64,000 nucleotides of DNA from Botryllus schlosseri (Eukaryota), in the NCBI GenBank assembly GCA_051294905.1, contig CM119383.1:21142001-21206000 (forward strand), written 5' to 3'. Below the pieces are notes generated by a model. It saw only the letters and a list, made by a program, of their open reading frames with translations. It was not told where the DNA came from and did not search any database. Numbering within the stretch: the first letter of the stretch is position 1; the number at the start of each line of letters is the position of its first letter. Both the position numbers and the translations under genes were made by a program. This document shows, piece by piece, positions 19,130-63,373 of the stretch.

Positions 19130-19260
19130 CGATGACGATATAGATGTGGACGTAAGAATTGGAAACCGCAAAATGAAGACAACACTAATTTTACGAAATG
19201 GATTCTATGGGCGTGGCGTCGTAAGGTGTGACTACGAAACGGTTTACGGGCCTGGGCTGT
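19130..19260 (+). pseudogene. Family B N-terminal fragment
   Basis: DIDVDVRIGNRKMKTTLILRNGFYGRGVVRCDYE matches KVDVDLTIGRRKVEATLILRSGLYGRGVIRCDYE at 35080. Confidence 0.75.
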
Positions 19261-19819
19261 CAAAGAAGGGTGGATCGTTGGTCTGGGCCCACAGACGGCG
19301 GAGGAAATCACAAAAAAACCTTTTATTTTCCTCATTAGGCTTCCTAGAGCTAAGTGTGTTTGGGGGGGGGGGTGATCCATCGTCGATAACTCTGGTTTTA
19401 CGTGTTCGACAAGCCCCATCTCTACGTGTTGTAGACATGTAAAACTTCGTTTAATTCTCGCTTCAGTTCAGTCAGTTTGTAGAAGTCAGGGTGGAGTTTG
19501 TAGAAGTCAGGGTGGAGGAGTTTACGGTATTACAGTTGAAGGCCAGACTATATCTGTGTCTGTCGTTTTTTACGTCGCGTAAGAGCGACTCGGGCTTAGT
19601 TTTGTCGGGTACCTGGTTCGAATCCGGGTGTCCCCTGTTTCAAGTCATTGGTTTCTCGCTCTGTCCGGCCAGAAGTCAGATATTAGACCAGGGTTAGCTT
19701 TGTAGAGTCGCACGAGTCAAAATGAGTCCGCTCGCTCGTTTACCTATTAGCATAGCTTATTGGTATGAAGTTTCTAGTACCATACTTCATTTTCATTTTC
19801 GTTTTTTTCAGAAATCATA

Positions 19820-20425
19820 ATGGAGATCATAGCTACTTCGTAAGACTGTAAAATTGACTTAACCATATACATTCGGAACCAAATGATCTCAGCGAAATTG
19901 CTAATGCAGCAAGGATTCTTCGCCCGTGGGGTAGTAGATTCTGATTGTAAAGCGAGAACGATACCACCGGACAGGCTTAATTTCAAAGTGATGGCAAAAT
20001 CCAACGTGCACTTGCCGCTGTCGTTGGCTGCAATGCCCAACGACTTCCATTCTGCACGCACCCACACGTTGATACAGGAGTATGGAAATGTCTTCATTAC
20101 GACCCATTTCATTGGACGTTCAACGGTTGCGGGGCTCATTATCAGTGACGATTTTAAAGCTGAACTACTCGTTTTTTATGACGTAATGTTTGCCATCACA
20201 TCATCTGGACTGCTGCGGTCCGTGCGTTTGGCGGTCGAAAGCCCGCCGTACGACGACGCCGTGAGACCGACGGACCGCAGCGGTCGGCGACCGTTGCTGT
20301 TCGTTCCTAACCACGTGTCGCAGCCGCAACCGCCCCAGCCTTCCTGAGCGGTGGTCCGCGAGCTGGTCGGTATGGCGGCAAGGCCGAAACGTACAATTCG
20401 GGCTCCGGTCCGAATGGACCTTTAG
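19820..20425 (+). pseudogene. Family B pseudogene
   Basis: ATG at 19820, TAA at codon 8 and TGA at 20345. Read-through ends AARPKRTIRAPVRMDL*, like the intact paralogs. Confidence 0.85.
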
Positions 20426-20519
20426 TTTCACTAACTCTGTCTTAGGGGTAGGAGCTAGATAGGAGTCGGATAGGTCGCTGGGTATGGCGAAAGATAGGTG
20501 CTGCGGACTGGCCGGCAGA

Positions 20520-21035
20520 TTTTCGCGCATCGCGCGGACGGTTTTTTCGCTTGTGCGCGGATTTCATTGAAAACGCGCCAGGGGGGTGGGGGGTGGTAGC
20601 GCGGTGCGTTTTTGCGCATCGCGCGGACGGTTTTTTCGCTTGTGCGCGGATTTCATTGAAAACGCGCCAGGGGGTGGGGGTGGTAGCGCGGTGCGTTTTT
20701 GCGCATCGCGCGGACGGTTTTTTCGCTTGTGCGCATATTTCATTGAAAACGCGCCAGGGGTGGGGGGTGGTAGCGCGGTGCGTTTTTGCGCATCGCGCGG
20801 ACGGTTTTTTCGCTTGTGCGCGGATTTCATTGAAAACGCGCCAGGGGGTGGGGGTGGTAGCGCGGTGCGTTTTCTCGCATCGCGCGGACGGTTTTTTCGG
20901 TTTTGCGCGGCTTTCATTGAAAACGCGCCAGCGGGGTGGGGGGTGGCAGCGCGGTGCGTTTTCGCGCATCGCGTGGACGGTGTTTTCGATTGTGCGTTGT
21001 GCGCGGGTTTCACTGAAAACGCGCCAGGGGGTGGC
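20520..21035. repeat. 87-89 bp GC/G-rich tandem repeat, ~6 copies
   Basis: gcatcgc recurs at 20527, 20616, 20703, 20790, 20877 and 20966. The unit contains the tttcattgaaa palindrome and G-runs. Confidence 0.9.
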
Positions 21036-21100
21036 CAGTCGTAACGCAATTCGTTTCTAGTACCGTACTTCATTTTCCTCATCGTATTTATCAGAAAAAA

Positions 21101-21664
21101 ATGGAAGTAATCACTAGTGTTTACGACGATTGCGTTGACTTCACAATCTATATCGGGTCACGACTTGTCTCTGCTAAATTGATAATGAAGGAGGGCTTCT
21201 TCGCCCGTGGCGTCGTCGAAAGCGATGTAGAAGCTAAATCGATCCCGACCGGCCGTCTCATTTTTTCAATCAAGAATGAAGATCCGTTTCACAGAAACGT
21301 AAGAGCGCCGCCTGCCTTGGCACCAATGGCCAATGATTTTCACTCGGAACGGGGGACAGATGTTCTAATGGAACAAGGCCAGGTCTTCGTTTCTACGCAT
21401 TTGAACGGGCGATCCAAAATTGCCGGAATAATGATTAGTCGTGACTACAAGGCAAAAATGCTTATTTTCATGGACGAAATGATGGCCATTTCGCGATCGG
21501 GGCTGGTCCATCCGGTAACTCTGGTCGTCGATCGCTCGGCGGATGCTGATATCATCCGACCGACGGATCGCAGCGGTCGTCGACCTGTCTTTTTTCAACC
21601 AAATCATGGACCGCAGGCGTTACCGGCACCGCCCGCTGGACCGGTGGTCCGGACCCCTTGCTGA
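21101..21664 (+). CDS. Family B protein, C-terminus truncated by a junction to a family A fragment
   Basis: Colinear with 33194, 61226 and 62756 (FTIY...L.MKEGFFARGVV...DFHS...GRS.IAG...DRSGRRPV). Confidence 0.75.
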   Translation: MEVITSVYDDCVDFTIYIGSRLVSAKLIMKEGFFARGVVESDVEAKSIPTGRLIFSIKNEDPFHRNVRAPPALAPMANDFHSERGTDVLMEQGQVFVSTHLNGRSKIAGIMISRDYKAKMLIFMDEMMAISRSGLVHPVTLVVDRSADADIIRPTDRSGRRPVFFQPNHGPQALPAPPAGPVVRTPC

Positions 21665-21972
21665 TGTTCACGAACGGATGAACAACCTGGATCAAGTACT
21701 TGACTACGAGAATTCACCGTTTTTTCAACGGTACATCGAAGTTATGATCGAAGCCGGGAATGCATTATATCTGAACGGCATTCACCTTTTGGCACTGAGT
21801 TTCCTACTGCGAAACAAAAACAAGTGGACAGGTAAGCTTAGGGCCCATATCGACAACGAAGAGTTTAAAGCAAATGCAACCACTGAAAACCTTGCAAAAA
21901 ACTAGTATCGTGGATATGTCATTCGTAAAGGCATGAATGACACAACGCATGTGTCTCCTGAACACTCCGCAC

Positions 21973-28085: not shown

Positions 28086-28089
28086 GTGA

Positions 28090-28110: not shown

Positions 28111-28629
28111 TCGCGTAAGTACTAACGGCTTGTTTCAGATTTAAAGACCCGTCGATTGAGCCGCTGCGGCCATTGTAGCTAAACTACCGTAAAACTTATT
28201 TATATTGTACCGTACTACTGCCGTACCTAGGATAGAACCTCTTCTTAGGCTACTTCTACTTTACCTCTTTTCTCTCTCTTTGCCGGCGACGAACTTCGAG
28301 TCTCCTTTAGACTCAACTCTCTTCAGGTCTTGACTCTCCCTCTCGAATCAAGACTTGTCGAGCTCTCCCTCTCCTAGTCTTGGCTCTCTCTCTCGAGTCA
28401 AGTCTAGGAGAGTCTGACTTTACTCTCGCGCCTCTCTCTGGAGACGTCGAGAGAGTGCCTTCTTAACCTCGAGTGAACTCGCCTGACGTCAGCCGTCTGG
28501 CGAGTATCGTTCGAGCTTACCGTGCCTCTTGAGCGCGCAGCCTACGCCCATCGAGACGTTGGTATCGATTTCGCGAGCGTTTGGAAACGCCTTGCTTTGC
28601 GTTCGATAGCTAGACAGAAAGACAGTAAG

Positions 28630-29925: not shown

Positions 29926-29962
29926 AAAACCGAAATAGCAACCCAGCCCTCTCCGCTATTCA

Positions 29963-32578: not shown

Positions 32579-33193
32579 ACATGAACAACAACCACGCAGC
32601 CAACCATTGAAGTAGCTGATTGCACTAAGATACATGAACAATATGTTCAAAAAATAAGAGCAAACAAATAAGAAGAAACCGTTAAATTAAGTTCACAAAC
32701 CGTTAAACTCCTAAGTTAGGAAATACAAATAATATAAAAATATACAAAAAATGTGTAATAAAGACCCCGGCGGGAGGTAGCCCTATTCTTAGAGAGGGGC
32801 TGCCAAACGCCGGTGGATACGGAGAGCCGTAAAAAAAAAAGTGGAAGGAGCTCCACGTTAGTTAGATTCAGGGTAAGGGTAGGAGCTAGATACAAGTTAG
32901 ATAGGACGCTGGTTATGGCGAAAGACAGGTGCTGCGGAATGGCTGGCGGCCTTCTGGGGGACTTGCCCCCCTGACTCTGGCTGGGGCAATATTTTCGCGC
33001 ATCGCGCGGACGAATTTTTCGCTTGTGCGCGGCTTTCATTGAAAACGCGCCAAGGGGGTGGGGGGTGATAGCGCGATTCGTTTGCGCAACATCTCGGTCA
33101 ATAGCCGGTACCTTCTTCGAATCTGGGTTTCCTCTTGAATCATTGGTCTAGTACCGTTCTTCATTTCCTCATCGTAATTTTCAGAAACAAACG

Positions 33194-33825
33194 ATGGAAA
33201 TAATTTCTAGCTGTTTTGACGAGTGCATCGACTTTACGATATATATTGCTTCAAGACTTGTGTCTGCAAGACTTATAATGAAAGAGGGATTCATCGCCCG
33301 TGCCATTGCCGACAACGATGTCGTGGCAAAAACGACCCCGCCTGGCCGCCTCACCTTTGTCGTGATGCCTGAGGATCCATTTTATAGACATGTTCGTTTG
33401 CCGTTGGGGTTGGCACCGATGCCGAACGATTTTCATTCGGCACGGAGCAAGAATGTCAGCATTGAAGGAGGGCACGTCTTCGTGACGACCCATTTCAACG
33501 GACGCTCAACAATCGCTGGCATTATGATCGAACGTAACTACAAGGCAAAAATGCTCCTCTTTTATGACGAGATGATGGCGATTGACCGCTCGGGATTGCT
33601 ATACTGTGTGACTTTGGTCGTCGATCGCTCGGAGAATGCCGACGTCGTAAGACCGACGGTCCGCAGCGGTCGACCACCAGTATTCCTGCAGGTCAATCAC
33701 GTAACGCAGGCGTTACCGGCAGCGCCATCTGCCCCAGTCATCCGCACCCTGGTCGGCGCGCCGCGGCCTTCGCGGCGGCAAGGCCGCGGCGCGCCATCCG
33801 TGCCCCGGTCCGCATGGACCTTTGA
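33194..33825 (+). CDS. Family B protein, extreme C-terminus frameshifted by a fold-back insertion
   Basis: Colinear paralog. An alternative frame at 33773-33825 reads AARPRRAIRAPVRMDL*. Confidence 0.8.
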
Positions 33826-35079
33826 TTTGATCTACAGTTTTTCGTTTATCTGTCTTTGATCTACAGTTTTTCGTTTATCTGTCTAACAGTTTCGTTTTAA
33901 CCGTCCTCATGAAGTTTTGTCATGTCGCTTATTTTATGCTATTTTCCGCCACTTTTAGTATTAGTAACTTAAGTTAATTGAATTGTGTTTTGGCCACCTT
34001 TGCTACTATCGTGTTTTATTGCTGAGTGTGTCGTTCTTATTTTTTGTTGACCACTTGTGTCTAGTATTCATATTTTATTTTATTGACAGTAAATTTATAT
34101 CTCCGCTTTTATCGTATTTTTATAAATCGCAATATTTCTTTTTTAGATCGTAATATCATAGCGTTAGTGTAAATGTGTTCTGAAACACTAGTTAGCTACT
34201 GATATGCGCGTTGGATACAATTGGACGGAAAGAGCTCGGTGTCAGTGTGTCGGAACAGTTTAACGGTGTCAAGCAAGGGTTGGAGTGAGGACGACTATGC
34301 GTGAGTGAAGTACTGTGTAACAGTACGTATAATTCAGTCTGCATGGCGTCGTTCGACCACGTCGTGCTTTCTGAAGCTTTATGTACTACTGTTACATACT
34401 ATAGCTTTATGTACTACTGTTACATACTATCACAATACTATTACAAAGTAGTTGTGTAGGAAGTGTTTGTGCTAGCGAGGTCATGCAACAGTGTGTTGTC
34501 AGGCTTGCATGTGCTGTTCGAGTTGTGCGTGCAAGGTTTTGCATAACACTGCTGCGTGACATGGGTATCGTTGTCAGGAAACTGGCTGTTATGTGTCATT
34601 ATGTAAACTTGAAAGTGCGGGACCTTGTTACCCAAGTTCATGTTACTTGAAGTGAACATAGTGTTACAAAACTTCGTAATAATCGTCGGACGTAGTCGAA
34701 TTAAAGTTGCGCATCATGCGATCATTTACGTTGTATTTGTATCATTCATGGGGTGATATTTGTATCATTCATGGGGTGAGGGGTGGTAGCGCGATTTGTT
34801 TTCGCGCAACCTCTCGGCTAATATCCGGATTAGTTCAGTCAGTTTTTAGAAGTCAGGGTGGACGAGTTTACGTTATTACAGTTGAAGGTGAGACTATATC
34901 TGCGTCTGTCGTTTGATGTCGCGTAACAGCGACCCGGGCTTCATTTTTCGGGTTATAGCATATATAGGTTCGCGTCCGGGTGCCCCTGTTTTATGTGGTC
35001 TGCATACATAATTGATTTAAAGTTTCTCGTCACATACTTCAATCCGCTAATTTAGTTATCAGAACATAAAAATAATATC

Positions 35080-36178
35080 ATGTCACTTGACATAATCGGA
35101 TACGCTAGTAAGGTCGATGTTGACTTGACAATTGGCAGACGTAAAGTGGAAGCGACGTTGATCCTACGGAGTGGTCTTTATGGACGAGGGGTCATAAGAT
35201 GTGACTATGAACGAGTGATCGGGCATGGGCCATCTGTGCATTTTATGACTCGCCCGCTGAACCCGTTTCATAACAATGTGCCAGTGCCGGAGGGACTAGC
35301 CAGAGTATTTCAGCACGTCAAATATGGGTTTCGCACAGTGTTGTCGTCACACACCTCGGATGGTGTGTTCTTTGCCACTCATTATGAAGGTCGCTGCACG
35401 TTGGCGGGCCTTATAATCCACGACCAATTTCAATGTGAGCTGCTCGTTTTCGACGACGTTTACATAGGACGGTCGCCAGCGGGCACCCCCACAAACTTGC
35501 CGATGGCGGTCGAAAGTCCGCCATACGACAACGTCGTGCCCGAAATGGAGTTGGACTCGGCATCGGTACGTCACACTGACATATCGCCGACATCTGGATC
35601 AACTGAGACGTCGTCAAGTGATGTATCGATGCCTTCAGTTTCAACTCCGGAATCCGCTGGCACCGTCGTGAAACGAGAGATGAAGAGGAAGCAATTTCCC
35701 CGAGTACACCTGTCGTATCGATGCCTTCGGTATCAACTGCGGAATCCGCTGGCACCTTTGTGAAAAGAGAAATGGAAGAGGAAGCAATTTCCCTGAGTAC
35801 ACCTGTCGTATCGATGCCTTCGGTATCAACTGCGGAATCCGCTGGCACCTTTGTGAAAAGAGAAATGGAAGAGGAAGCAATTTCCCCGAGTACACCTGTC
35901 GTATCGATGCCTTCGGTATCAACTGCGGAATCCGCTGGCACCTTTGTGAAAAGAGAAATGGAAGAGGAAGCAATTTCCCCGAGTACACCTGTCGTATCGA
36001 TGCCTTCGGTATCAACTGCGGAATCCGCTGGCACCTTTGTGAAAAGAGAAATGGAAGAGGAAGCAATTTCCCCGAGTACACCTGTCGTACCGAATATTGT
36101 CGTAATGAATCCTGTCGTACCGAATTCTGTCACTCCTCCCAAAAGGGTTATCAAAAAGCCTCAAAGACTCGATCTGTA
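35080..36178 (+). pseudogene. Divergent family B protein with a 31-aa repeat tail; one 1-nt deletion separates head from tail
   Basis: Head aligns with family B (THYEGRCTLAGLII...VESPPYD). The tail frame ends PPKRVIKKPQRLDL*. Confidence 0.7.
35623..36086 (+). repeat. 93-bp coding tandem repeat, 5 copies
   Basis: gtatcgatgcc at 35623, 35715, 35808, 35901 and 35994 (first unit 92 bp). Confidence 0.9.
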
Positions 36179-36919
36179 GTGTTGGTAGTAATTTTCCATA
36201 TCGTTTCGTTATTGACGCTCTCTTTTATGTTCTGCTTTTAAGCTCCGGACATGCATTTTTACTGCTTTTATACCCCATGTCATTTTAGTACTGCTTTCTC
36301 AATTTCTTTCAATCATGTATTTTACATGCACAATCTCTATTATTCAGATAATATTAAAATAGCATTAGTGATAAGTATTATGAAGCAATAGTGATTCAAT
36401 CAATGTGGTCGAAGAGAGAAATCGGGATAAAGCTTGTGGTGTTACTTTATTGGAATAGATCAATGACGTCGATGAAGTGAGGATGAATCGGCATTGAAAA
36501 AGGTCATGTGTAACACCATTAATACTTCATGTTTCATGGCGTTGTTAGGTTAGCTTTATGTTTTGTGAAGTGTGAGGTAGTGTTACATAATGTCACATTT
36601 ATCATATAAAATAGTTGTTTCAAAGTTTTTGTGCTTGCAATGTCAGAGTGCAGCTTATTGCGTGTCTTGTACTTGCTTTGTTTACGTCGGCGTATGAGGT
36701 GTAACATTATACTGTTTCATTGTTTCGTTTTAACTGCAAGAACGAATGTTTCACTATTTGAACTTTAGAAAGCATGCGGTTGTTTCACAAATAGATGTTG
36801 TTTCAAGTTTACATAGCGTTGCATAATATCACGAGCGTTAAAGAGTGACTTATATGCAGTATCACACCTCTTATTTTCATTTACGATATTATTTGCAGAT
36901 ACTCGTGCTTAACATTACA

Positions 36920-37609
36920 ATGGCTAGCTCTATGACTAAGAATGACGACGGCAATGTTACTGTTAGTGTGGAACGTGATGTGTCTGATTCATGTCAGATG
37001 TCGCAAGATGCTGTCGTTATTCAGACAGAGATGGCGTCTCTATCGCTTATCTCGAGAAGCTCTGGAAGTGATTCCAATCACGTATCGGTTGCTTCGGAAA
37101 CATCCGGAATTTATCCACTCTCTTCATCGACCGTTTCGGGAAGCTCACAAGCCGACCCCATACCTGTTCCTGATCGAGCCAATCCTGGATGCTACCTACT
37201 AGTACCAATGAACCTGTACAAGGAAGGACGTAGGTCTTTGGTCGGTCCTGAAGAATTTCTTGCTTGGTGTAAAGAAGAAGAAGCAAAGGGTAACTCTGAA
37301 GTGGAGATGATCCAGCAATTTACGATCAATAGGTCGGATGGCGACGAAGGAAGGTCGAATAGCGTGGCAATACATATCATTCGAGAGGTCTGGAAAGGCC
37401 GACTTGTCAAGTTTACCAGACCAGAAAGGTTTCCTGCTCAATAGGAGAAGGTCGAGGGTGAAGGTGATCTTTTTGATGGGTCGGCACAAGTCAGTCATGA
37501 ATTTCCAACGGATCGCAATGGAGGAAACCTCTCCGAGGAGGTCAAACAGACGAAGCAGAAATAACAAGAGGGCGAATCCGCGAAGTTAGCGGAGTCTGCT
37601 GAACAATGA
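36920..37609 (+). pseudogene. Family C pseudogene
   Basis: PVPDRANPGCYLLVPMNLYKEGRRSLVGPEEFLAW matches 38037. Premature TAG at 37442; the 3' end and downstream DNA are duplicated at 38290-38620. Confidence 0.75.
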
Positions 37610-38036: not shown

Positions 38037-38477
38037 ATGACTATGTCGAAGCCAAAGGCCGGCGATGGCTATTTCGAACAGACTGTATATCAATTTGACG
38101 CGTCGCAACATCCTGACCTTGTTAAGTTGGAGACGAAGACTTTACCGATTTCTGCCGATTCTGATCCTGGACCTGATCCGGTTCCTGACCCAGACGATCC
38201 AAATGCTTATCTACTGATACCAGCCGACCTGAACCGCGAAGGTCGTAAAACGCTGATAAGTCCTGAGCAGTATATGGCTTGGTATGAAGAAAGGTTTCCT
38301 GGTCAACAGGAGAAGGTCCAGAATGAAGGTGATCTTTTCGAAGGGTCACCGGTACAAGTCTGTCCGGAATTTCTGAAGGATGGCAATGGAGGAAACCTCT
38401 CCGAGGAGGTCAAAGAGACGACGCAGAAAAAACAAGAGGGCGAATCCGCGAAGTTAACGGAGTCTGCTGAACAATGA
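38037..38477 (+). CDS. Orphan family C protein (acidic, Pro-rich, ~146 aa)
   Basis: Open ORF; near-identical core to 63664 (DPNAYLLIPADLNREGRKTLISPEQYMAWYEERFPGQQEK). Confidence 0.7.
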   Translation: MTMSKPKAGDGYFEQTVYQFDASQHPDLVKLETKTLPISADSDPGPDPVPDPDDPNAYLLIPADLNREGRKTLISPEQYMAWYEERFPGQQEKVQNEGDLFEGSPVQVCPEFLKDGNGGNLSEEVKETTQKKQEGESAKLTESAEQ

Positions 38478-42852: not shown

Positions 42853-45800
42853 TTAAGTTCCCTCTGCTGGCTTGAAATGGCTGTTTCTCGGTGGAATGAG
42901 AAAACGAAGGTTGTCGCGTCGACGAACGCGGGAAATTGCAACGTACGCACATCCAGCACTCAATCTTGGACGATCGAACCATACGATTACCTTATTGAGT
43001 GTTTGGCCTTGGACCTTGTGAATGGTTGTGGCGTAGGCCAAGTCAATTGGGTAGTAAGTCCCTTCTGGCGACGTAATTGGATACACGCGGATCAAGTGAC
43101 CGCTGGAGATCTTCAGAAGTATCGTGTGCCCGACGACGGCATGAATCAAACCGCACTGGCCGTTGACATACCCCCTGCGTTTTTGCCGATTTTCAGTAAT
43201 CACAACACGCATTCCGAAATAGACAGGTTGCAAGTTCGATTCAGCTGTCGGATACCTAACTTGAAGAAGCGGTAACGAGCGCGCGAAGATCTTATTTCGT
43301 ACAGCCAAGTTGTATTGCCGCGATGTTTGACGGGTAAAGGTCAAAACCTTGAAGTCAGCGTGTTTGTCATAGCGTGTTTGTCATATATTGCTACAAGAGC
43401 CTCGTCCGAAAAATCGGGCGTGTCTTGCAACACCAATCCCTCAGCGAATCGCGATTACGATTCTGCCGACGGTCGCTGAAGCCGACATTCATTCAAAAAG
43501 GTAGAGAGGACCACATCCGTTGTACGAAACTGTTGCAATAGGGTGGTCTTGTCGCATTTGCTCAATATACCGCGATGAGAAAAAAGACTACCGATTACGC
43601 CGTCAACGGGAACTGGCTGTAATTGCCATTTGTCCCCGCATAGAACGACGACCGATCGATCAGATATGAATGAGAGGGTCGTCGATATATGATCGCCGTG
43701 GGTGAGCGATATCAACGATATCTCGTCGATCAGGATCAAGTCATACTGTCGCAGCTGCCAGTTCATTCGGGATTCCGAGCCCTCGCCTACACGCAATCCG
43801 AAAGCCGCGTGAACCGTATCTGTACTTAGTTGGTTTCCGAATGCAGTCTTGTACGTTGTAGCCAAAAGACCGGTCGGTGCCAACAACAAGACTCTGCATG
43901 CCATAGCCAAACCCGGACGGATGATTTCTTTGATACAAATAGATTTTCCGGTGCCTGGAGATCCAACGAGTAGATGGTACCGATCATGACCATCGTCATT
44001 TTCGTCCAGTATTGCGGGATCCATTCGTCTGTGCAGTCGATGGACGACGCAGTTGACGAAAGCGGCTTGCATGGGTGATAAAGTCGTTGCCGGAGCAACA
44101 ACGAGATCCGTTACATTCAATTCATCGAAGGTGAATGTTCCTTCGTAATGCTCATTCCAGACCTGGAATAAGCTCACCACATAAGACCACAACGTAAATA
44201 TATAGTTACTCCGACATGCTTTCTGTTGGCAGACTAATGTAATGGAATTCCTGTCCTGCCAAAAGCTTGCCCTGTTATGGACAGCAAAAGAAAACATCTT
44301 GATGTCTGCAGGTAACGTGTCAAAAAGAGGATGAACTAATTCCGAAAGCTTGCGGAAGGCCACATTCATTAGCGCGTCTTGGAAAAAATAAGTGTTGTTG
44401 AATAGGTCAACAAACTTGACTCCAAGCAGTAGCGGTTTAGTAGCGCGTCGGGGATGAGATTGACAGCGAGCCACCGTGAAATTTCGGAGGAATTCGAACA
44501 GCGTCATACGCTCGGCACTAGGCATCCTGTTGCAATAGGCTTTGACGATGTCATTTGTCTGCGCGCGCTCAAAAGTGGGAACTAAGAATCTTTTCGTGTC
44601 AGAGCATGTGTACGCCATCTTTACATCGCTCAAAAGCGCTATCATTTCCGGCTCTGCGGGAGCCAAATTGCGTAGATATCGGTAGGCAACGCTTTGTGCC
44701 GACAGGTCGGAAAACAGCACCTCACGCGGAACGTTATGTTCCCGAAATTTAGATACGTATGATGCAACATACTTCAACAACATGGTCTGGCCGTCCGTCA
44801 TCTGAACATCCATTGAACACCTCAAGGCCTGTGTTAGTGAAGGGATGTAAACCCGCAAATTAACAGAATGGGCGCGTTCCGAACGTTTCAGCAACAACAC
44901 TTGCGATCCAGAAATAAAGTCGATGACGCTCGGTTGTTCGCGCACCTCTAAACCTCTTACGGGCTGTCTGCTTTTCTGCGTATTGTATACTATATCGCAA
45001 AACTCCGCGTCGCGTTCTGGAAAATCTGCGCAAAATTGTCCTATATCTACTTTTGCGGGATCCCACAACCAGGCTAGATAATGCACGTGCAAGGTGCCGC
45101 GTTGCTGAAATTCATACCTATAAAAGTATGTTTTTACGTTGCACCCCGGCGAGTTGGCATCACGCAATACGTTTTGGCGCCAGTCTCTCTTGCCCCGGCC
45201 TGACACGAAATGCCGCATGACTTCTGTCAGTACATGTGCGATATGTAATGTCTCCAGAGCTGCTAAATCCGTGGGTCCTTTAGCAAGAGCGTCCATTCTA
45301 TTGGCGATCACGTCGGAAGAAGGAAAAGTCCACTCGTAAGGGCTTACTGTAATAAATACGTCTGGAAATCCGTACTGACGCACGGCATCCACGATAAAAC
45401 TTAACTGCCACTCCCAGTATGTTGGGGAGAACGTTTTGGAATCTAAAGCTCTCGCCGGAGAGCAGTCAAGTGCCCGAGCGGTAGATATCGCACCCGATAT
45501 GGTTTTATAGAGCCAGCGATCGAATTGAAAACGAAGCAGCGGGAAGCATGCCGAGAAATCTAAAACTCCCGACAAAATTTTCAAGAGGTGCGACTTCTTT
45601 GCGCTTTTCCGGTCCCCGGAATCGGTTATGGAAGTCTCGCACATCAACAAATGGATAAAGAATAGGCCAAATGGCGGTTTCAACAAATTTGAAACTGAAC
45701 AGCTGGTCGCAGTTCAGCGTTCTAGGCAGCTCGCTGTTATCGTGCTGTCTAATAAGCTGGCCATACGCACTCTCTGGAGAGGCACACAAAAATTCATGAG

Positions 45801-46250
45801 CTCTTTCTAGACGTTGCCGACGTACGTCGCACGACACAGCAGCAATGCTAGATTCCACGGAATGACTACGAATGGTTGCGTAAACCGCACCGTCCTTTGA
45901 TCTATAACCGTGTTGCCTTATGGCGTTCGATCCGTAATGCAGTTTGTAAATCGAAAGGACTGTCATGTCGTTAAAAGTCAAGCCGCGTATTGATTCGGGC
46001 CAACTTTCAAGCACAGGCACCGAGTAATTCGCATTACTGCAAGCGCACTTACCGGCCGGCAAAAACCTTCCTCGTAAGGCAGCTTCGGACAGCCCCCTGG
46101 TATATGCTGATCCACAACGTTGGCATTCGATCCACGCGCCAGTCGAAATCCAGGCAGCCAGCTTTACTCCTGCTTCAATATTAACGTCGGCTTCCTGCCG
46201 AGGCGGTATTACGATGTCTCCAAAATCGTTCCAATGCCGCTCATTCTGGC
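42853..46250 (-). pseudogene. Second Helitron-type Rep-helicase, decayed
   Basis: EFQQRGTLHVHY, YVASYVSK, GSPGTGKS, ILIDEISL and TIHKVQGQTL. Frameshift at ~45642, in-frame TAA at 43455 and a 14-nt duplication at ~43357-43384. Confidence 0.9.
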
Positions 46251-54687: not shown

Positions 54688-54689
54688 AA

Positions 54690-55929: not shown

Positions 55930-57267
55930 TCCGTAATAAAACGAAGCAAAACATTAGGCAGTAGCTAGGAGGGAAATAGACACTTTGCATTAGGCAAAGT
56001 GCCGGTAGCAACAGCAAGAAAGAGCTTTCTTGCACACAAACATATCTTTCACAAACCCATTGTGAGGATCAAATTTGAATAAGGGACACAATATTAATTC
56101 AATTTCGGCTTTAAACATAAAAATATATAGATATTTAGACCTTAAAAAGACCAAAAGCAGTGTGATTTTACAGACCGACTGCGACCATTGTTGAAGAATC
56201 TGGTAGACAATGCGAAACAGAGACTTCGTTTGTCTCAAAGGTAGCAAAACAATTAGAAGAACAATCAAGAAACAGAAGACAATAAGAACTTAGAAAACGC
56301 TCAAAAAAAGCTGTTTTTCATATGAAATGGAAGAAAAGACGTGATATATCAATCTGAAACAAAGAACAGCAAAGCAATAGGCGATAGGAAGTACGCAGTA
56401 AACAGAAAATAGTAGACGTTAGACGTCTGCTGTTTAGGCAAAGTACCGGTAATGGTAGCAGGAAAGGAGCCTTTTCGCTCTTAACCTCTATCTTGCATAT
56501 ACACATTACGCGAATTATTTTGACTGAAGAACACAATGTCAACTCAAATTTGGCTCAAAACTTAAAAATATATAGATTTCTAGACCATAAAAAAGAACAA
56601 AACAAGGATTTTCATAGTCCGATTGTGACCATTGTCGAACAATTCGGTAGACAATGCAAAGCAGTGACTTCGTTTGTTTTGAAAGAGGAAAAGACAATTA
56701 CGGAAACAAAGAAGTCAAGAAGAACAATTGAACCATAGAACACGCTCCAAAACAGCTGTGTTCATTTGGAAATAAAGGGAAAGCACGATATACCAATTTG
56801 GAAACCCAAAGACAAGGCCGACCACTTCTCTGTCGGTCTTTTGAAGAAAGAAGAAATAACATGTACGCGACTCACAACAAAGAATGCCGGAGCAGTGAAA
56901 TCTGAGGAAAAGGAGACGACGACGCCCACGGAAGATGCCTGGATGACGAAGCCCCCTGACCGATGATGGAGCTGCAGACCGTGAACCGATGACACGATGA
57001 TGACATGATGGGATTGAAGAACAAATGCTTTTTCCTTATTTTCAGTTTTATAGATTATATTGAAATTTACATGTATTAAAATTCTCGGTGTAATAAATTT
57101 GTGGATGCCCGCGGGCCCCGAAGAAAAAAAAAAGTGGACCTCCACGTTAGTTAGATTGCTGGTCATGGCGAAGGTTAGTGGTTCGAATCACGGTGTGACC
57201 TTCTATTATGTGATCGGTGTTTTGCGTCGCTTGAGTCAGATATTCGGTTAGAGTTGCTCGAGTCAGG

Positions 57268-57560
57268 GGGTGGGGGGTGGTAGCGCGGTGCGTTTACGCG
57301 CATCGCGCGGACGTATTTGTCGGTTGTGCGCGGCTTTCATTGAAAACGCGCCAGCAGGGTGGGGGGTGGAAGCGCGGTGCGTTTTTGCGCATCCGCGGCT
57401 GGCTGGTTTGTTCGGTTGTGCGCGGCTTTCATTGAAAACGCGCCAGCTGGGTGGGGGGTGCTAGCGCGGTGCGTTTTCGCGCATCGTGCGGACGGAATTG
57501 TCGCTCGTGCGCGGCTTTCATTGAAAACGCGCCAGCTGGAGGGGGGGTCGTAGCGCGGCG
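57268..57560. repeat. 87-bp G-rich tandem repeat, ~3 copies (single copy at ~32990-33075)
   Basis: Same unit as 20520-21035 (gcggctttcattgaaaacgcgcca...ggggtgg-agcgcggtgcgttt). Confidence 0.85.
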
Positions 57561-57634
57561 TTGAAAATTTCCAATATATTTCCTCATATTCAGCATCATA
57601 CTTCATGTTCATATTGTCGTCTTTAGAAAGCAAA

Positions 57635-58045
57635 ATGGAAGTCATTTCTAACATTTATGACGAATGTATCGAGATTACTTATACTTATTTCATTCAGTCA
57701 AGGATGATAAGAGCCAAACTGGTCATGAAAGAGGGCTTTTTCGCTAGAGGACTCGTCCAAACTGATGTCGAGGCGATAAAGGTTTCGCCGGATCGCTTGA
57801 TTTTGCAAAAAGCCGCAATCGCCGTTCCACAGGAACGTGCGGCTGCCTGACAACTTTGCTTCGTTGCCGGGCGACTTTAGTTCGGCGCGAAACAAAGTAA
57901 TTGTGTTGCAAGAAGGACATGTCTTCGTATCAACAATGTGGAATGGGAGGTCCACCATTGCGGGATTCATGGTGGCAGACGATTTCCGGGCTGAATTTCT
58001 GGTGTTTCACGATCAGCAGAAAAAAATAAGCAGAAATGGCCATAT
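57635..58045 (+). pseudogene. Family B pseudogene, frameshifted and 3'-truncated by a junction to block copy 3
   Basis: MEVISNIYDECIE...LVMKEGFFARG and GHVFVSTMWNGRSTIAGFMV. Confidence 0.8.
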
Positions 58046-61000
58046 TGAGACCCGCATTTCTCATGGGAAGTTCGTCGACTTCGGTGCGATCGATAAAATT
58101 ATACTTGGAGTAGCGTATCGTGTCTTAGTAGTAAACTACGCGATGCGATCGAACTGAAAGTCTGCCATGGGATGTAGTTCGACGATTGGGTGCCACAAAC
58201 AGACATCCCATGCACCTCGGGCGGGCTGGGAGCGGTTGTTACGTCATAATGAGTGAAATCCGTTATTACATGTAACTGTATAGTGGCTACAGGGTTGTAT
58301 CTACTTATACGAGTTTCATTACACGTGTCTCTTTCTTGTAGCTATAATATTATTATAACTTTTCTGACACCCTATAGTTGCAGACATGCTAGACACTTCA
58401 TTTTGGTGTCATTGGAAAGGTTGCAAAAAAATCTCCATCCGTTTTTTTTTTCAAGTCTCTACTTCAAGTAGTTTTGGAGTAGTGGCTTTGTAAAGTAGTT
58501 TCAACGTAGTTTCAACATCGTGATAGCTACTGCCTTCATATTTGTATCGTACAATAGTCGTTGCAAGACAATTTTTCAGTCCAAGTATCAAGTAGATTTG
58601 TCAAGTAGTTTTTGAGTAGTGGCTTTGTAAAGTAGTTTTATGATAGTTTCAACGCCGTGAGTGCTATCGAATTGATTTTTGTATCGTTCAATACTTGTGG
58701 CAAGCCCAATCTTCAGTTCAAGTATCAAGTAATTTTGTCAAGTAACAAACATTTTATAGTATTTTTAATGTTTCGGGAATGCTTTTTGCCATGTTGTGGT
58801 AGCGCTAGAGAGTTGATTTTTCCACGGATGGATACCGTTGGCAAGACCTATCTTCAATAAAAATTTCAAGTGGATCGGACCACGTGGAGAAAAGTTACAC
58901 GTAAATAATATTTTTGACTAGGTTCTGGTGGTCGTAAAGACTCGATATCTTCAATTCTGAAACGTCGCGTCAGGACCTATCTTCAGTGAAAATTTCAAGT
59001 GGATCGGATCACGTGGAAAAAAGTTACGAATTTCGCGTTTTTGACCATGTTCCCGTGGTGCTAGAGAGTTGATTTTCTCAATTCTGAATGCTCTCGTCAA
59101 GACCTATTCTCAGTACAAATTCCAAGTGAATTGGACCACGTGGAAAAAAGTTACGAATTTCGCGTTTTTGACCATGTTTCCGTGGTGCTAGAGAGTTGAT
59201 TTTCTCAATTCTGAATGCTCTCGTCAAGACCTATCTTCAGTACAAATTCCAAGTGAATTGGACCACGTGGAAAAAAGTTACGAATTTCGCGTTTTTGACC
59301 ATGTTCCCGTGCTGCTAGAGAGTTGATTTTCTCAATTCTGAATGCTCTCGTCAAGACCTATTCTCAGTACAAATTCCAAGTGAATTGGACCACGTGGAAA
59401 AAAGTTACGAATTTCGCGTTTTTGACCATGTTCCCGTGCTGCTAGAGTTGATTTTCTCAATTCTGAATGCTCTCGTCAAGACCTATTCTCAGTACAAATT
59501 CCAAGTGAATTGGACCACGTGAAAAAAAGTTACGAATTTCGCGTTTTTGACCATGTTCCCGTGGTGTTAGAGAGTTGATTTTCTCAATTCTGAATGCTCT
59601 CGTCAAGACCTATCTTCAGTACAAATTTCAAGTGAATTGGACCACGTGGAAAAAAGTTACGAATTTCGCGTTTTTGACCATGTTCCCGTGCTGCTAGAGA
59701 GTTGATTTTCTCAATTCTGAATGCTCTCGTCAAGACCTATTCTCAGTACAAATTCCAAGTGAATTGGACCACGTGGAAAAAAGTTACGAATTTCGCGTTT
59801 TTGACCATGTTCCCGTGCTGCTAGAGAGTTGATTTTCTCAATTCTGAATGCTCTCGTCAAGACCTATTCTCAGTACAAATTCCAAGTGAATTGGACCACG
59901 TGAAAAAAGTTACGAATTTCGCGTTTTTGACCATGTTCCCGTGGTGTTAGAGAGTTGATTTTCTCAATTCTGAATGCTCTCGTCAAGACCTATCTTCAGT
60001 ACAAATTTCAAGTGAATTGGACCACGTGGAAAAAAGTTACGAATTTCGCGTTTTTGACCATGTTCCCGTGCTGCTAGAGAGTTGATTTTCTCAATTCTGA
60101 ATGCTCTCGTCAAGACCTATTGTCAGTACAAATTCCAAGTGAATTGGACCACGTGGAAAAAAGTTACGAATTTCGCGTTTTTGACCATGTTCCCGTGGTG
60201 CTAGAGAGTTGATTTTCTCAATTCTGAATGCTCTCGTCAAGACCTATTTTCAGTACAAATTCCAAGTGAATTGGACCACGTGGAAAAAAGTTACGAATTT
60301 CGCGTTTTTGACCATGTTCCCGTGGTGCTAGAGAGTTGATTTTCTCAATTCTGAATGCTCTCGTCAAGAGCTATCTTCAGTAAAAATTTCAAGTTGATTG
60401 GACAAGTAATAAAAAAGTAAAGCCTTTTCTAATTATTTTCGAAGCTATTTAACCATGTTCTGGTTGTGGTTGGGACTTCATTTTTTATTTTCTGAGAAGG
60501 GCGGGAAAAAGCAATTAATCTATGTGAATTTCAAGTCAATCGGAGCACGAAATCTAATTTTTTTCAGGAGCCCTTATTTTCAAAAAAACAGTTTGTGGTG
60601 GCGCTAGAGAGTTACTTTTTTTTTCTGGAAAGAGCTGGGAAAGGCGATTAATCTATGTAAATTTCAAGTAAATCGGCCAACGTTTACTATTTTTTCAAGT
60701 ACGAAATGTGTTCGAAATAAAAAACTTCAATGTTTTCTGTGATTTCTCTCTCAGTTTTAACGGTATCGTCTCGGGGAAGTCGGCGTTCGAAAGATGTGTG
60801 TAAGAAGAACCCAGAACTTTTCGAATTTTCTCGATAGCTATCACGGTCTCGAAATGACAGCCATTTCAAAATGACAGTTTTTCCGGACCAAAAAGTCGAC
60901 TTTTTCGAATTTTCTTTAGCCAAAAAATTTCGAAAAATTTTCATTTTTTTCCCCAAAAAAAAATTTTTTTTCCCAAAAAATCTGAAATTTTTGACCCCCC

Positions 61001-61185
61001 CCCAGCCGAAGTTTGGAGTGCCTAGGACCAACTCCAGCCATTTTAGCCATTCTACCATGCTACAGTATAGGACCTGGACTTATGTGTACCCAAGTCGTTT
61101 TCGAGTCACGGTCGGATCAGTGAACTTGAGTGTCCGGGAATGAACCGAGTGGGAGTGAACCGTTCTAGAACTTTCTCGGAATATG
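58040..61185. repeat. Module non-coding block, copy 3, ending in an HSE (gTTCtaGAActTTCt, 61162-61176)
   Basis: Colinear with copies 1 and 2. Confidence 0.85.
58760..60420. repeat. 127-bp tandem satellite, ~12-13 highly similar units
   Basis: acgtg anchor at 58882, 59011, 59138, 59265, 59392, 59517, 59644, 59771, 59898, 60024, 60151 and 60278. Confidence 0.95.
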
Positions 61186-61225
61186 GCGTGACATCCTGTT
61201 CGTTTTCGTCTTTTCAGATATCATT

Positions 61226-61843
61226 ATGGAAACTTACTGCTATTCCTTCGACCGAAAGATTGAATTGACCATTTACTTAACCAATCGAGTGGTCACCGTA
61301 AATTTTCTGCTCAAGAAAAACTTTCACGCGCGCGGTGTTGTCTTGACGGATTCCAAAGTCACGTTGAACGAGGATGGCAGGCTAATTTATAGGAATATGC
61401 AAAAGTCGCCATTTTATCGGAACATTTATCTTCCATCTACTTTGCCCGTCATATGTGACGACTTTCATTCTGCTCGTCAGACGAATATAACCGAGCATAA
61501 CCGCAATGTCATCCTGTGCACAATGTTTCAGGGGCGTTGCACAGTTGCTGCCGTTATGCTACGTCAGCACTTTAAAGCGGAAACCGCCATTTTATATGAC
61601 GTGCAACACGCCCTTATGAAATGCGGTTTGAAGCGATATGTCCCTCTCGGCATTGAACGCCCGCCATATGATGATGAAGTACCAGGGACGGTGAATGGAA
61701 ACCAGCTCCCAGTATTGTTGGTCCCTAATCCTGTACTGCAGGCGTTGCCGGCACCGCCAGCTGGAGCGGTGATCCGCACCCTAGACGGCGCGGCGGAAAG
61801 GCCGAGGCGCGAGAGCCGGGCCCCGGACCGCTTGAATCTTTGA
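61226..61843 (+). CDS. Family B protein, intact (205 aa)
   Basis: Open ORF colinear with paralogs; ends RPRRESRAPDRLNL*. Confidence 0.8.
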   Translation: METYCYSFDRKIELTIYLTNRVVTVNFLLKKNFHARGVVLTDSKVTLNEDGRLIYRNMQKSPFYRNIYLPSTLPVICDDFHSARQTNITEHNRNVILCTMFQGRCTVAAVMLRQHFKAETAILYDVQHALMKCGLKRYVPLGIERPPYDDEVPGTVNGNQLPVLLVPNPVLQALPAPPAGAVIRTLDGAAERPRRESRAPDRLNL

Positions 61844-62755
61844 TTTACAAATATTATGCCGAATAATTTCGTTTTCGATGCTTTGAAGTTGATGTCACGC
61901 CAATTTTTATGTATTTTTATGAACGCTTTTACTATTATTCACTTTAGTTAAGTTAAGTTAAGTTAATTGCATTTTTTTGGCCACCTTTGCTACTATCATG
62001 TATTGCCTTTAGTGTCGTCTTTAATTTATGTTGGCCAGTTGGTTCCGATATTCGTCATTGTTTTATGTTATTATCAATACCATTTTATCGCTTTTATCTT
62101 TCTGTAGGTCTTATCAACTGTGCATCGCATTTCTTTTAATCGCTTCTTTGTTTTTCAGATCATATTATGAAAGCGTTAGCGTACACGTGTTCTGAAACAC
62201 TAGTTAACCACTGATATGCGCCTTGAACAGAATGGGGCAGAAAAAGGTCGGTGTCAGCTCGTCGGAACACTGCGACGGTGTCAAGCCGGGATTTCAGTAT
62301 ATACGATTCTTCGTGAGAGAAGAAGTACTGTGTAACAGTACGTGAACTTTAGTGAGCATTGCGTTGTCGATCACGCCGTGCTTTCTAAAGCTTTATTTAC
62401 TGTTACATAATGTCACAATTCTAATATTAAATAGTTCTGTATAAATTGTTTGTGCTTACGAGGTCATGATACAGTGTCTTGTCTGTCTTGCATATGCAGT
62501 TCTGAGTTGTACGTGCAAGGTTTGGCAAAACACTGTTTCGTTACATGGGTTCCGGTGTAGGGAAACTTGCTGGTATGTGTGACTATCCACACTTCAAAGT
62601 GCATCAACCTGTTACCCAGGTTTATGTTCCGTGAAGTCAGCATAGTGATACGAAACATCGTAATTATCGTCGGACGTACTCGAATTAAAGTTGCGCATCA
62701 TGCGATCATTTACATAGCATACTGTATTTTCATATTCGGTTTTTCAGAATTAAAA

Positions 62756-63373
62756 ATGGAGCCTATTATCAGTTGCTATGATAACAATATCACTTTGACC
62801 ATCTATTTGCCGAACCGTATGGTGTCGGCAAATCTCTTAATGAAAGACGGTTACTTTGCGCGCTGGGTGATCAACAGTGACACGAAAGTTGTTAAAAACA
62901 CAGAAGGAGAGCTGAAGCTGAAGGTCCTGCCGGAATGCCCTTTCCACGCCAACGTATCCTACCCGCCAAATCTTCCATATTTGGCGGATGACTTTCATTC
63001 GCCGCGGCAGCAGACATCGGTTCAACACCAGGGAAATCTGTTTCTGTCAACGATGTATCTTGGAAGGAAGACGGTCGTGGGATTGATTTTCCACGACGAG
63101 TTCCAAGTTTGCCATCATGTTTATCATGACACTAAACTTTTCCTCACGCCATCTGGGCTAAAAGAAAAAGTCAAGTTGGCCGAGGAACGGCAGCCTTTTG
63201 ATAAGCCTGTCATTCCAAGAGACCGCAGCGGACGTAGACCGGTTTTCTACGTCCCAAATCATGTAAGGAAGCCGCAACCGCGAAAGCCATCTGGTGCGGT
63301 GGTGCGCGTGCTAGAGGGTATGGCGGCAAGGCCGAGGAGATTCATAAGGGCGCCATTGCGGATGGACTTATAG
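62756..63373 (+). CDS. Family B protein, intact (205 aa)
   Basis: ATG at 62756 after a ttttcag acceptor; ends RPRRFIRAPLRMDL*. Confidence 0.8.
   Translation: MEPIISCYDNNITLTIYLPNRMVSANLLMKDGYFARWVINSDTKVVKNTEGELKLKVLPECPFHANVSYPPNLPYLADDFHSPRQQTSVQHQGNLFLSTMYLGRKTVVGLIFHDEFQVCHHVYHDTKLFLTPSGLKEKVKLAEERQPFDKPVIPRDRSGRRPVFYVPNHVRKPQPRKPSGAVVRVLEGMAARPRRFIRAPLRMDL

What the first reader, a model, noticed from the sequence alone, without database searches (positions are those of the whole stretch)
19130..63373. Family B: eight diverged copies of an orphan beta-rich ~200 aa protein
Seen: copies at 19130, 19820, 21101, 33194, 35080, 57635, 61226 and 62756 share alternating hydrophobic strands and motifs (F/Y-ARGVV, DFHS, GR-T-IAG, DRSGRRPV). 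They differ widely in sequence, which implies long purifying selection. Inference: the size, beta character and Arg-rich terminus would fit a single jelly-roll or other structural or nucleic-acid-binding fold. I cannot assign a fold from sequence alone.
Basis: partly seen in the sequence, partly recalled or inferred. Interest (0 to 1): 0.72.

Follow-up and report, generated by a model that had tools for sequence, protein, structure and literature searches.

The report
Orphan beta-rich tandem gene family
Eight copies (five still open) of a ~205-residue protein with no detectable relatives sit in a repeated gene cassette in a transposon-rich eukaryotic region; they are real genes kept by selection, with a predicted all-beta domain matching no solved structure, and nothing supports a virus capsid.

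Summary
All eight listed copies exist, all on the + strand, and a profile search of the six-frame translation finds no ninth. Five are open reading frames and three are broken. Pairwise identity is 24-66%. Synonymous sites are saturated while non-synonymous change stays lower (dN/dS 0.15-0.40 where it can be estimated), so the protein is under purifying selection.

The family is a true orphan. There were no hits in Pfam, PDB sequences, a 5.8-billion-protein word search, an exhaustive profile search of 1.84 billion representatives, viral contigs or JGI metagenomes.

AlphaFold2 predicts a 145-residue all-beta core (5+5 strands joined by short turns; pLDDT 84, pTM 0.77) and a disordered Pro/Arg-rich tail with conserved short motifs. 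Foldseek found no jelly-roll or capsid match in PDB or BFVD (TM below 0.3).

Each copy has a conserved pyrimidine tract plus YAG 6-17 nt before its ATG, which looks like a splice acceptor. The copies lie in a repeated B-B-C-A cassette with two other orphan families, among Helitrons, LINEs and satellites.

My best reading is a lineage-restricted cellular multigene family that encodes a non-enzymatic binding module. The virus-like-particle idea is not supported. One point is unexplained: the B cores are much older than their flanks.

The parts
19146..19442 (+). Family B fragment (broken copy). About 35-55 of ~205 residues are recognisable. It is closest to the 35080 copy.
   Evidence: It abuts a fragment of repeat element R (18804-19135).
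19820..20422 (+). Family B copy over the full family length, with 2 in-frame stops (pseudogene, or a shortened product).
21101..21664 (+). Family B copy, open, 187 aa. The core is complete. The tail is shortened and overlaps a family A fragment.
   Evidence: modelled copy
33194..33859 (+). Family B copy, open, 221 aa. The core is complete. The tail has one frame change relative to the family.
35080..36179 (+). Most divergent family B copy (ORF 35080-35763). Its tail is expanded by 5 copies of a 93-nt coding repeat, with one frame change before a family-type C-terminal end.
57635..58049 (+). Family B copy, broken: 1 frameshift, and the 3' part is replaced by an insertion of repeat element R.
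61226..61843 (+). Family B copy, open, 205 aa, with the full family-type tail and C-terminus.
62756..63373 (+). Family B copy, open, 205 aa from the conserved ATG, with the full family-type tail and C-terminus. A poly(A)-signal word follows 3 nt after the stop.
   Evidence: (modelled copy)
20443..21056 (.). Array of 87-nt repeats (about 6 units) directly upstream of the 21101 copy.
32874..33088 (.). 87-nt repeat unit(s) upstream of the 33194 copy.
57264..57558 (.). 87/89-nt repeat array (about 3 units) upstream of the 57635 copy.
33954..34741 (.). Spacer S between the two B genes of cassette II. It is 73-84% identical to 61943-62713. Its right end also recurs at 37758-37944.
61943..62713 (.). 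Spacer S between the two B genes of cassette III.
36920..37444 (+). Family C gene (diverged copy) downstream of the 35080 B copy.
38043..38477 (+). Family C gene, cassette II.
63664..64000 (+). Family C gene, cassette III, cut by the window end. Against the 38043 copy it gives pS 0.25 and pN 0.09.
38723..39664 (+). Family A gene (helical domain). Further A copies lie at 583-2076, 17481-18604 and 21519-21959, and at 41241-42348 (1 frame change).
2337..5893 (+). Helitron Rep/helicase gene, read in three frames (2 frame changes or short introns). Neighbour, not part of the family.
42862..46182 (-). Second Helitron Rep/helicase gene, read in three frames (2 frame changes). Neighbour.
58040..61188 (.). 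Repeat element R with a 127-nt satellite (12 units), inserted after the broken 57635 copy. Other R copies lie at 25612-26659 and 47339-49788, with a fragment at 18804-19135.

Best explanation
Family B is a lineage-restricted, tandemly amplified cellular (eukaryotic, probably animal) gene family. It is not a viral structural gene.

Shown: there are eight paralogues, five of them open. Each encodes a ~145-residue all-beta core of two five-strand halves joined by a conserved 25-residue loop (PF[HY]-x-N-[VI] ... DFHS-x-R). The core is followed by a ~55-residue disordered Pro/Arg-rich tail with conserved short motifs (DRSGRRPV-like, PNHV, ALPAPP-x-G-x-V-x-R, RPRR-x-x-RAP-x-R-[LM]-x-L at the C-terminus). 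The protein sequence is under purifying selection. There is no signal peptide or membrane segment, and no invariant His, Cys or catalytic-type residue set. Every copy carries a conserved pyrimidine tract plus YAG a few bases before a conserved ATG. The genes sit in a repeated cassette (repeat array - B - spacer - B - C - A) with two other orphan families.

Inferred: the upstream signal is a 3' splice acceptor (a 5'-UTR intron or spliced-leader trans-splicing), so these are processed host-type mRNAs. The beta core is a non-catalytic binding scaffold. The tail presents short linear motifs and a basic, NLS-like end to partners, probably in the nucleus. It may act together with the co-clustered A protein (helical domain plus long basic tail ending in a K-rich run) and the small acidic C protein. 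Deep divergence of the cores would give each paralogue a different binding specificity.
For: The family is real and selected. It has no homologue anywhere. An all-beta core and disordered tail are predicted twice, from different reference copies: pLDDT 71 and pTM 0.61 for the full length, pLDDT 84 and pTM 0.77 for the core. There is no hydrophobic segment (maximum Kyte-Doolittle score 1.5). The core is near neutral, and the tail is basic in four of five open copies and 11-21% Pro. Invariant residues are R, D, P, L, T and G only. The acceptor-like signal is conserved upstream of all seven copies that keep a 5' end, and similar signals lie upstream of the A and C genes. The cassette order is repeated. 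All copies share one orientation, and the broken copies abut repeat insertions, so B looks like a target of transposons rather than part of one. Family A has expressed-looking or assembled relatives in an independent public sample (P0079 and P0080).
Confidence: 0.55

Rival explanations
1. Families B, C and A are passenger or accessory genes of a large mobile element (a Helitron or another DNA transposon). They would be amplified by its copying, and purifying selection would act on the element's own master copies.
For: The region is full of mobile DNA: two Helitron Rep/helicase genes, three LINE copies and satellite-bearing repeats. A family A copy lies directly next to each Rep/helicase gene (583-2076 before 2337-5893; 41241-42348 before 42862-46182). 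Repeat arrays and spacer S recur beside B genes. Transposon ORFs are often missing from protein databases, which would explain the orphan status.
Against: B is never adjacent to a Rep/helicase gene. The A-to-RepHel arrangement differs between the two places (same strand in one, convergent in the other). All eight B copies and all A and C copies are on one strand, whereas the Helitron genes are on both. Both Rep/helicase genes carry frame changes while five B genes stay open. No B relative turned up in any collection searched, although 78 relatives of this Rep/helicase did. A had only two, both from one Logan sample whose link to any Helitron could not be checked. No terminal inverted repeats flank spacer S. 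Helitron termini could not be defined.
Confidence: 0.2
2. The cassette is a diversity or recognition module, or a selfish one. Anciently diverged B cores would be kept as distinct specificities and exchanged between conserved flanks. Examples would be self/non-self recognition, genome defence, or a toxin-antidote-like cluster.
For: B cores are at synonymous saturation (pS 0.74-0.89). In contrast, spacer S upstream is 73-84% identical and the C gene downstream has pS 0.25 between the same two cassettes. The nearest relatives of B copies are not their positional counterparts. Tails and 5' signals are better conserved than cores.
Against: pN stays well below pS in every pair, so there is no sign of positive selection at this resolution. 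The right end of S occurs three times and may simply be a young repeat inserted independently. One window gives too few copies to test for recombination or site-wise selection.
Confidence: 0.12
3. B is the capsid or another structural protein of an endogenous virus-like element, with a single jelly-roll and an Arg-rich arm.
For: It has the size, beta-richness and a basic disordered terminus. A Rep/helicase of the HUH-SF1 type is present in the window.
Against: There is no capsid or jelly-roll hit in PDB or BFVD and no Pfam or PDB sequence hit. The strand order is a meander with short turns. The Rep/helicase genes are ordinary Helitron genes, 36-40% identical to Helitron-family proteins that include ones annotated in ascidian genomes. 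The eight copies are deeply diverged in a tandem array, unlike a provirus. No relative was found in 2.9 million viral contigs. From general knowledge, the Arg-rich arm of small icosahedral capsid proteins is usually N-terminal, whereas here it is C-terminal.
Confidence: 0.04
4. The ORFs are decaying repeats that no longer code for anything.
For: Three of the eight copies are broken. There is no expression evidence.
Against: Five ORFs of ~190-225 codons remain open despite saturated synonymous divergence. pN/pS is 0.3-0.7, and dN/dS is 0.15-0.40 where it can be estimated. The start codon, C-terminal end and upstream signal are all conserved.
Confidence: 0.03

Closest known systems
Taxonomically restricted (orphan) tandem multigene families of eukaryotes
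   Same: There is no homologue outside the lineage. Several paralogues lie in head-to-tail arrays in repeat-rich DNA, some copies are pseudogenised, and the rest are under purifying selection.
   Different: This is a description of a phenomenon, not a molecular family, and it says nothing about mechanism. Two features are unusual here: the family is locked into a repeated three-family cassette (B-B-C-A), and its cores are far older than their flanks.
Single jelly-roll capsid proteins of small icosahedral viruses
   Same: About 200 residues, beta-rich, with a basic disordered terminus.
   Different: There is no sequence or fold match. The predicted topology is a ten-strand meander. The basic arm is C-terminal. 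There is no viral gene context.
Nucleoplasmin-like / plant HD2-type histone chaperone N-terminal domains (beta core plus disordered charged tail with NLS)
   Same: The overall layout matches: a beta core followed by a long disordered tail with a basic end. The only sub-threshold PDB sequence hit of this kind is HDT2 (7vmf_A), at E = 1.1 over 54 residues.
   Different: The hit is not significant, and no nucleoplasmin structure appears among the Foldseek hits. The core has ten strands in 145 residues rather than eight in about 100. The tail is Pro/Arg-rich, not acidic.
DNA sliding-clamp domains (DnaN, PCNA, herpesvirus processivity factors)
   Same: They top every Foldseek list. Like them, B looks internally duplicated.
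   Different: E-values are 0.01-0.1, TM is 0.1-0.2 and rmsd is about 20 A, so this is not a structural match. Clamp domains have helices lining the ring, and B is predicted to have none.
Helitron passenger proteins such as the RPA-like OB-fold proteins of plant Helitrons (from general knowledge)
   Same: Small beta-rich proteins encoded near a Helitron Rep/helicase.
   Different: There is no Pfam OB or RPA match at E up to 10 and no OB-fold Foldseek hit. B is not adjacent to the Rep/helicase genes.

Membership tests
Single jelly-roll capsid protein | Eight-strand BIDG/CHEF jelly-roll fold | tested here: not met
   Two AlphaFold2 models give ten sequential strands with 2-3-residue turns. Foldseek against PDB and BFVD gives no jelly-roll or capsid hit, with TM below 0.3. 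Caveat: the models rest on 6-9 sequences.
Single jelly-roll capsid protein | Sequence or profile similarity to a capsid family | tested here: not met
   Pfam at E up to 10, PDB profile search, the 1.84-billion-representative profile search and the viral contig scan were all negative.
Single jelly-roll capsid protein | Linkage to viral replication or packaging genes within one element | tested here: not met
   Pfam scans of the large ORFs found only Helitron Rep/helicase, LINE endonuclease/RT, RNase H, zinc-knuckle gag and DUF7041.
Single jelly-roll capsid protein | Assembly into particles | not testable with these tools
   Needs experimental structural or proteomic description.
Helitron passenger gene | Lies between defined Helitron termini | tested here: inconclusive
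   The two Helitron copies share only a 167-nt stretch at 71% identity, so termini could not be defined.
Helitron passenger gene | Constant position and orientation relative to the Rep/helicase gene | tested here: not met
   B is never adjacent to RepHel. A is adjacent twice, but in different relative orientation.
Helitron passenger gene | Relatives carried by related Helitrons elsewhere | tested here: not met
   78 RepHel relatives were found. No B relative was found anywhere, and only two A relatives were found, both in one sample.
Nucleoplasmin-like histone chaperone core | Significant profile match to the nucleoplasmin/HD2 N-terminal domain | tested here: not met
   The best hit is E = 1.1 to 7vmf_A. 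There is no Pfam hit.
Nucleoplasmin-like histone chaperone core | Acidic tracts in the tail; pentameric beta-sandwich | tested here: not met
   The tail is Pro/Arg-rich with pI 8.5-12 in most copies. There is no Foldseek hit. Oligomeric state could not be tested.
DNA sliding clamp domain | Structural superposition on a clamp domain | tested here: not met
   Clamps are the top hits, but with TM 0.1-0.2 and rmsd about 20 A.
OB-fold / RPA-like ssDNA-binding protein | OB barrel recognisable by profile or fold | tested here: not met
   There is no Pfam match and no OB structure among the Foldseek hits.
Taxonomically restricted tandem gene family | No homologue outside the lineage despite exhaustive search | tested here: met
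Taxonomically restricted tandem gene family | Several paralogues with conserved ORFs under purifying selection | tested here: met
Taxonomically restricted tandem gene family | Expressed as mRNA and protein | not testable with these tools
   Only indirect evidence exists: the conserved acceptor-like signal and start context.

The most novel reading that the evidence does not exclude
Family B founds a new all-beta fold. Its anciently diverged cores are maintained as distinct specificities and exchanged between conserved flanks inside a three-gene B-C-A cassette. That would make it a lineage-specific recognition, genome-defence or selfish module of a kind not yet described.
Probability: 0.13. Interest if true: 0.75.

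Novelty: new member of a known kind. Interest (0 to 1): 0.4.

Why it matters
At the protein level the family is new. It has no relatives among about 15 billion predicted proteins, and a fairly confident predicted all-beta domain matches nothing in PDB or BFVD. If an experimental structure confirmed the model, it would add a fold or a strongly divergent superfamily.

The repeated B-B-C-A cassette is the other point of interest. B cores at synonymous saturation are embedded between much younger flanks. This is a compact natural case for studying how tandem orphan families persist and diversify in transposon-rich DNA.

As a phenomenon, a lineage-restricted tandem family of unknown function is common in eukaryotic genomes. 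The result also has practical value: it removes the virus-like-particle reading.

Tried and rejected
1. The jelly-roll or capsid idea is rejected.
2. Single-sequence and profile homology searches were all empty: Pfam, PDB, the 5.8-billion word-indexed set, the 1.84-billion exhaustive set, viral contigs and JGI metagenomes. The alignment was too variable for a pattern scan.
3. Exact look-ups of three window proteins (two B copies and the 3635-5917 helicase ORF) in public assemblies found nothing, so the source organism stays unidentified. Rfam and tRNA scans of the window were empty.
4. I tested whether the 87-nt upstream arrays are E2F-site arrays. TTTSSCGC occurs 17 times against 10.9 expected, and most repeat units lack it, so this is rejected.
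5. A heat-shock-element-like word occurs at the right end of repeat R. There are only 3 matches in the window, 2 of them homologous copies, so it is not significant.
6. I tested for an internal duplication of the B core. hhalign of the N half against the C half stays in register over 47 columns, but E = 0.08, so it is suggestive only.
7. A conserved metal or catalytic site is rejected, because the His residues in PFH, DFH and TH are not invariant across copies.
8. Terminal inverted repeats around spacer S: none found.
9. A literature search for the motifs and for the sample accession found nothing.
10. Family A was searched against PDB and JGI metagenomes with no result.
Full report
**Observation.** They are 19146-19442 (fragment), 19820-20422, 21101-21664, 33194-33859, 35080-35763 (tail repeats continue to 36179), 57635-58049, 61226-61843 and 62756-63373 (ORF lists; tblastn). 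A family profile run with all filters off against every six-frame piece of at least 25 residues finds these and nothing else. Pairwise identity is 24-66%, with E-values from 1e-15 to 1e-82. The quoted motifs are present in the alignments. Five copies are open. The 19820 copy has two in-frame stops. The 57635 copy has one frameshift and loses its 3' part to a repeat insertion. The 19146 copy is a fragment. Among the open copies, only 61226 and 62756 keep the complete family-type tail. The 21101 tail is shortened and runs into a family A fragment. The 33194 tail has one frame change. The 35080 tail is expanded by five 93-nt coding repeats.

**The protein.** A full copy has about 205 residues. 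Two AlphaFold2 runs used different reference copies and alignments. The 62756 copy at full length with 6 sequences gave pLDDT 71 and pTM 0.61, with the core blocks at 67-88, mostly near 85. The 21101 copy core with 9 sequences gave pLDDT 84 and pTM 0.77. Both give the same secondary structure. Five strands occupy residues 2-57, a conserved loop occupies about 58-84, and five more strands occupy 85-142. Consecutive strands are joined by 2-3-residue turns. Residues from about 150 to the end are disordered. The five models of the second run range from pLDDT 84 to 52, so the fold is a hypothesis. The two halves align in register over 47 columns, but only at hhalign E = 0.08, so an internal duplication is suggestive only. 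The invariant residues are Arg, Asp, Pro, Leu, Thr and Gly. The His residues of the PFH, DFH and TH motifs vary between copies, which argues against a fixed metal or catalytic site. The core is near neutral. The tail is 11-26% Pro and mostly basic, and carries conserved short motifs ending in R-[LM]-x-L at the C-terminus. There is no hydrophobic segment and no signal-peptide-like N-terminus.

**Homology.** Every search came back empty:
- Pfam found nothing at E up to 1. At E up to 10, one copy hit cNMP_binding at E = 0.13.
- PDB sequences gave nothing by phmmer. The family profile gave only a designer PPR protein (E = 2e-4, judged spurious) and HDT2 at E = 1.1, which is not significant.
- The word-indexed search of 5.8 billion proteins found nothing.
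- The exhaustive profile search of 1.84 billion cluster representatives found nothing at E up to 0.001.
- Viral contigs and JGI metagenome contigs found nothing.

The best hits are bacterial sliding clamps (E 0.01-0.03, TM 0.1-0.2, rmsd about 20 A) and one phage tail tubular protein (E 2e-3, TM 0.29). No capsid or jelly-roll protein appears.

**Selection.** Nei-Gojobori counts on a codon alignment give core pS of 0.65-0.89, which is saturated, against pN of 0.19-0.57. For the three closest pairs dN/dS is 0.15-0.17. It is 0.27-0.40 for the other pairs where dS can be estimated. The copies are therefore old, and the protein sequence has been kept by purifying selection.

**Gene signals.** The ~50 nt upstream of all seven copies that keep a 5' end are conserved. 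They end in a pyrimidine tract and an invariant YAG followed by A, 6-17 nt before a conserved ATGGA start. Similar tract-plus-CAG/TAG signals lie 5-55 nt upstream of the start codons of the family A and family C genes. I read these as 3' splice acceptors. They could belong to a 5'-UTR intron or serve for spliced-leader trans-splicing, and the sequence alone cannot tell which. A canonical poly(A) word follows the stop closely only at the 62756 copy.

**Context.** The window is eukaryotic and transposon-rich, with no tRNA or Rfam hit. The mobile and repeated DNA comprises:
- Two Helitron Rep/helicase genes (2337-5893 on +, 42862-46182 on -), each read in three frames. They are 36-40% identical to Helitron-family proteins, whose only named members come from the ascidians Ciona and Phallusia.
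- Three LINE copies with zinc-knuckle gag, endonuclease, RT and zf-RVT domains.
- An RNase H ORF and a DUF7041 gag-like ORF.
- A repeat element R with 127/137-nt satellites.

An animal source is therefore likely but not shown.

All-against-all BLAST of the ORFs shows two further orphan families on the same strand.
- Family A has a ~230-residue helical-looking domain and a long basic tail ending in a K-rich run. It has five copies.
- Family C is a small acidic protein with three copies.

The order is repeated: 87-nt array, B, spacer S, B, C, (C), A in 32.9-42.5 kb, and 87-nt array, B, [R insertion], B, S, B, C in 57.2-64 kb. A rearranged version (A, B fragment, B, array, B, A fragment) lies in 17.5-22 kb. 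Family A has only two database relatives, both from one Logan sample (SRR25569784), at 53-63% identity. Neither family A nor family C has a Pfam hit, and the family A profile has no PDB hit.

**Unexplained age mismatch.** Compare cassettes II and III. Spacer S is 73-84% identical, and the C genes have pS 0.25 and pN 0.09. The B cores lying between them are at background nucleotide identity (44-49% against a 45% background) with pS 0.74-0.89. The nearest relatives of B copies are not their positional counterparts. Two explanations remain. The flanks may be young: the right end of S occurs three times and may be a repeat, or there may have been gene conversion. Alternatively, old B cores may be exchanged between conserved flanks. 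One window cannot decide between these.

**Interpretation.** The best-supported reading is a lineage-restricted cellular multigene family. It would encode a non-enzymatic all-beta binding core with a motif-bearing disordered tail, probably nuclear. It may act with the co-clustered A and C proteins, with diverged cores giving different specificities. That the family is real, selected and orphan is shown. The splice acceptor, the cellular origin and above all the binding function are inferred.

The main rival (about 0.2) is that B, C and A are cargo of a mobile element. Two A copies do sit beside Helitron genes. Against it, B never does, and the arrangement is not constant. The families keep one orientation while the Helitron genes do not. 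The Helitron genes are frame-broken while B is kept open, and broken B copies abut repeat insertions.

A diversity or recognition module (about 0.12) would explain the age mismatch, but no positive selection is visible. The capsid reading (about 0.04) and the non-coding reading (about 0.03) are disfavoured by direct tests.

**Comparison and novelty.** No known family passes a membership test; the table gives the rows. What this resembles is the general class of taxonomically restricted tandem gene families, and I file it there. The protein family itself, and possibly its fold, are new. The phenomenon is common. Interest is moderate.

**Limits.**
- The source organism is unknown.
- There are no expression data.
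- The alignments are shallow.

**Note on the operators' rule.** Searches printed coordinates of matching pieces of broken genes (B copies and Helitron Rep/helicase genes), from which the places of breaks could be inferred. Consensus lines were printed by the alignment tools themselves and were not used.

Noticed in passing
583-2076, 17481-18604, 21519-21959, 38723-39664, 41241-42348 (all +): Family A is a second orphan family: a ~230-residue helical-looking domain plus a long basic, Ser-rich tail ending in a K-rich run. Its only database relatives are two proteins (P0079, P0080; 53-63% identity) from one Logan sample, SRR25569784. Two copies lie directly beside Helitron Rep/helicase genes.
   Followed up: partly
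36920-37444, 38043-38477, 63664-64000 (+): Family C is a third orphan family: a small acidic protein with a strongly conserved C-terminal half, always downstream of a B gene. The 38043 and 63664 copies are young (pS 0.25), unlike the neighbouring B genes.
   Followed up: partly
33954-34741 vs 61943-62713; B cores 33194/61226 and 35080/62756: There is an age mismatch. The non-coding spacer and the C gene are 73-89% identical between the two cassettes, while the B cores between them are at synonymous saturation. The cause is not resolved: young or homogenised flanks, or exchange of old cores.
   Followed up: partly
25612-26659, 47339-49788, 58040-61188, fragment 18804-19135: Repeat element R carries 127-nt and 137-nt satellite arrays (12 units at 58842-60403). 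Two broken B copies abut R sequence. The right end of R carries a TTCnnGAAnnTTC word (49763, 61163). In one copy a TATA-like box follows.
   Followed up: partly
28477-32119 and 50199-55929 (+): Two related LINE copies (same protein families, no nucleotide-level match) each sit between an R element and an 87-nt array plus B gene. This is the same relative position twice, which suggests either an old duplication of the whole unit or a target-site preference.
   Followed up: no
20443-21056, 32874-33088, 57264-57558: 87-nt GC-rich tandem repeats with G-runs lie directly upstream of three B genes. They may act as promoter or enhancer arrays, or they may be satellite DNA. The E2F-site idea was not supported.
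   Followed up: partly
35623-36093: A 93-nt (31-codon) tandem repeat, 5 copies at 97% identity, lies inside the tail of the 35080 B copy. It is a recent in-frame expansion and is readable in two frames.
   Followed up: partly
2337-5893 (+) and 42862-46182 (-): Two diverged Helitron Rep/helicase genes, each read in three frames. Their only named relatives are from the ascidians Ciona and Phallusia (about 40% identity), which gives a weak hint about the source lineage.
   Followed up: partly
8898-9464 (+), 10618-11673 (-), 14927-17349 (+): Further retroelement remnants: a DUF7041 gag-like ORF, an RNase H ORF on the minus strand, and a third LINE RT/zf-RVT copy.
   Followed up: no
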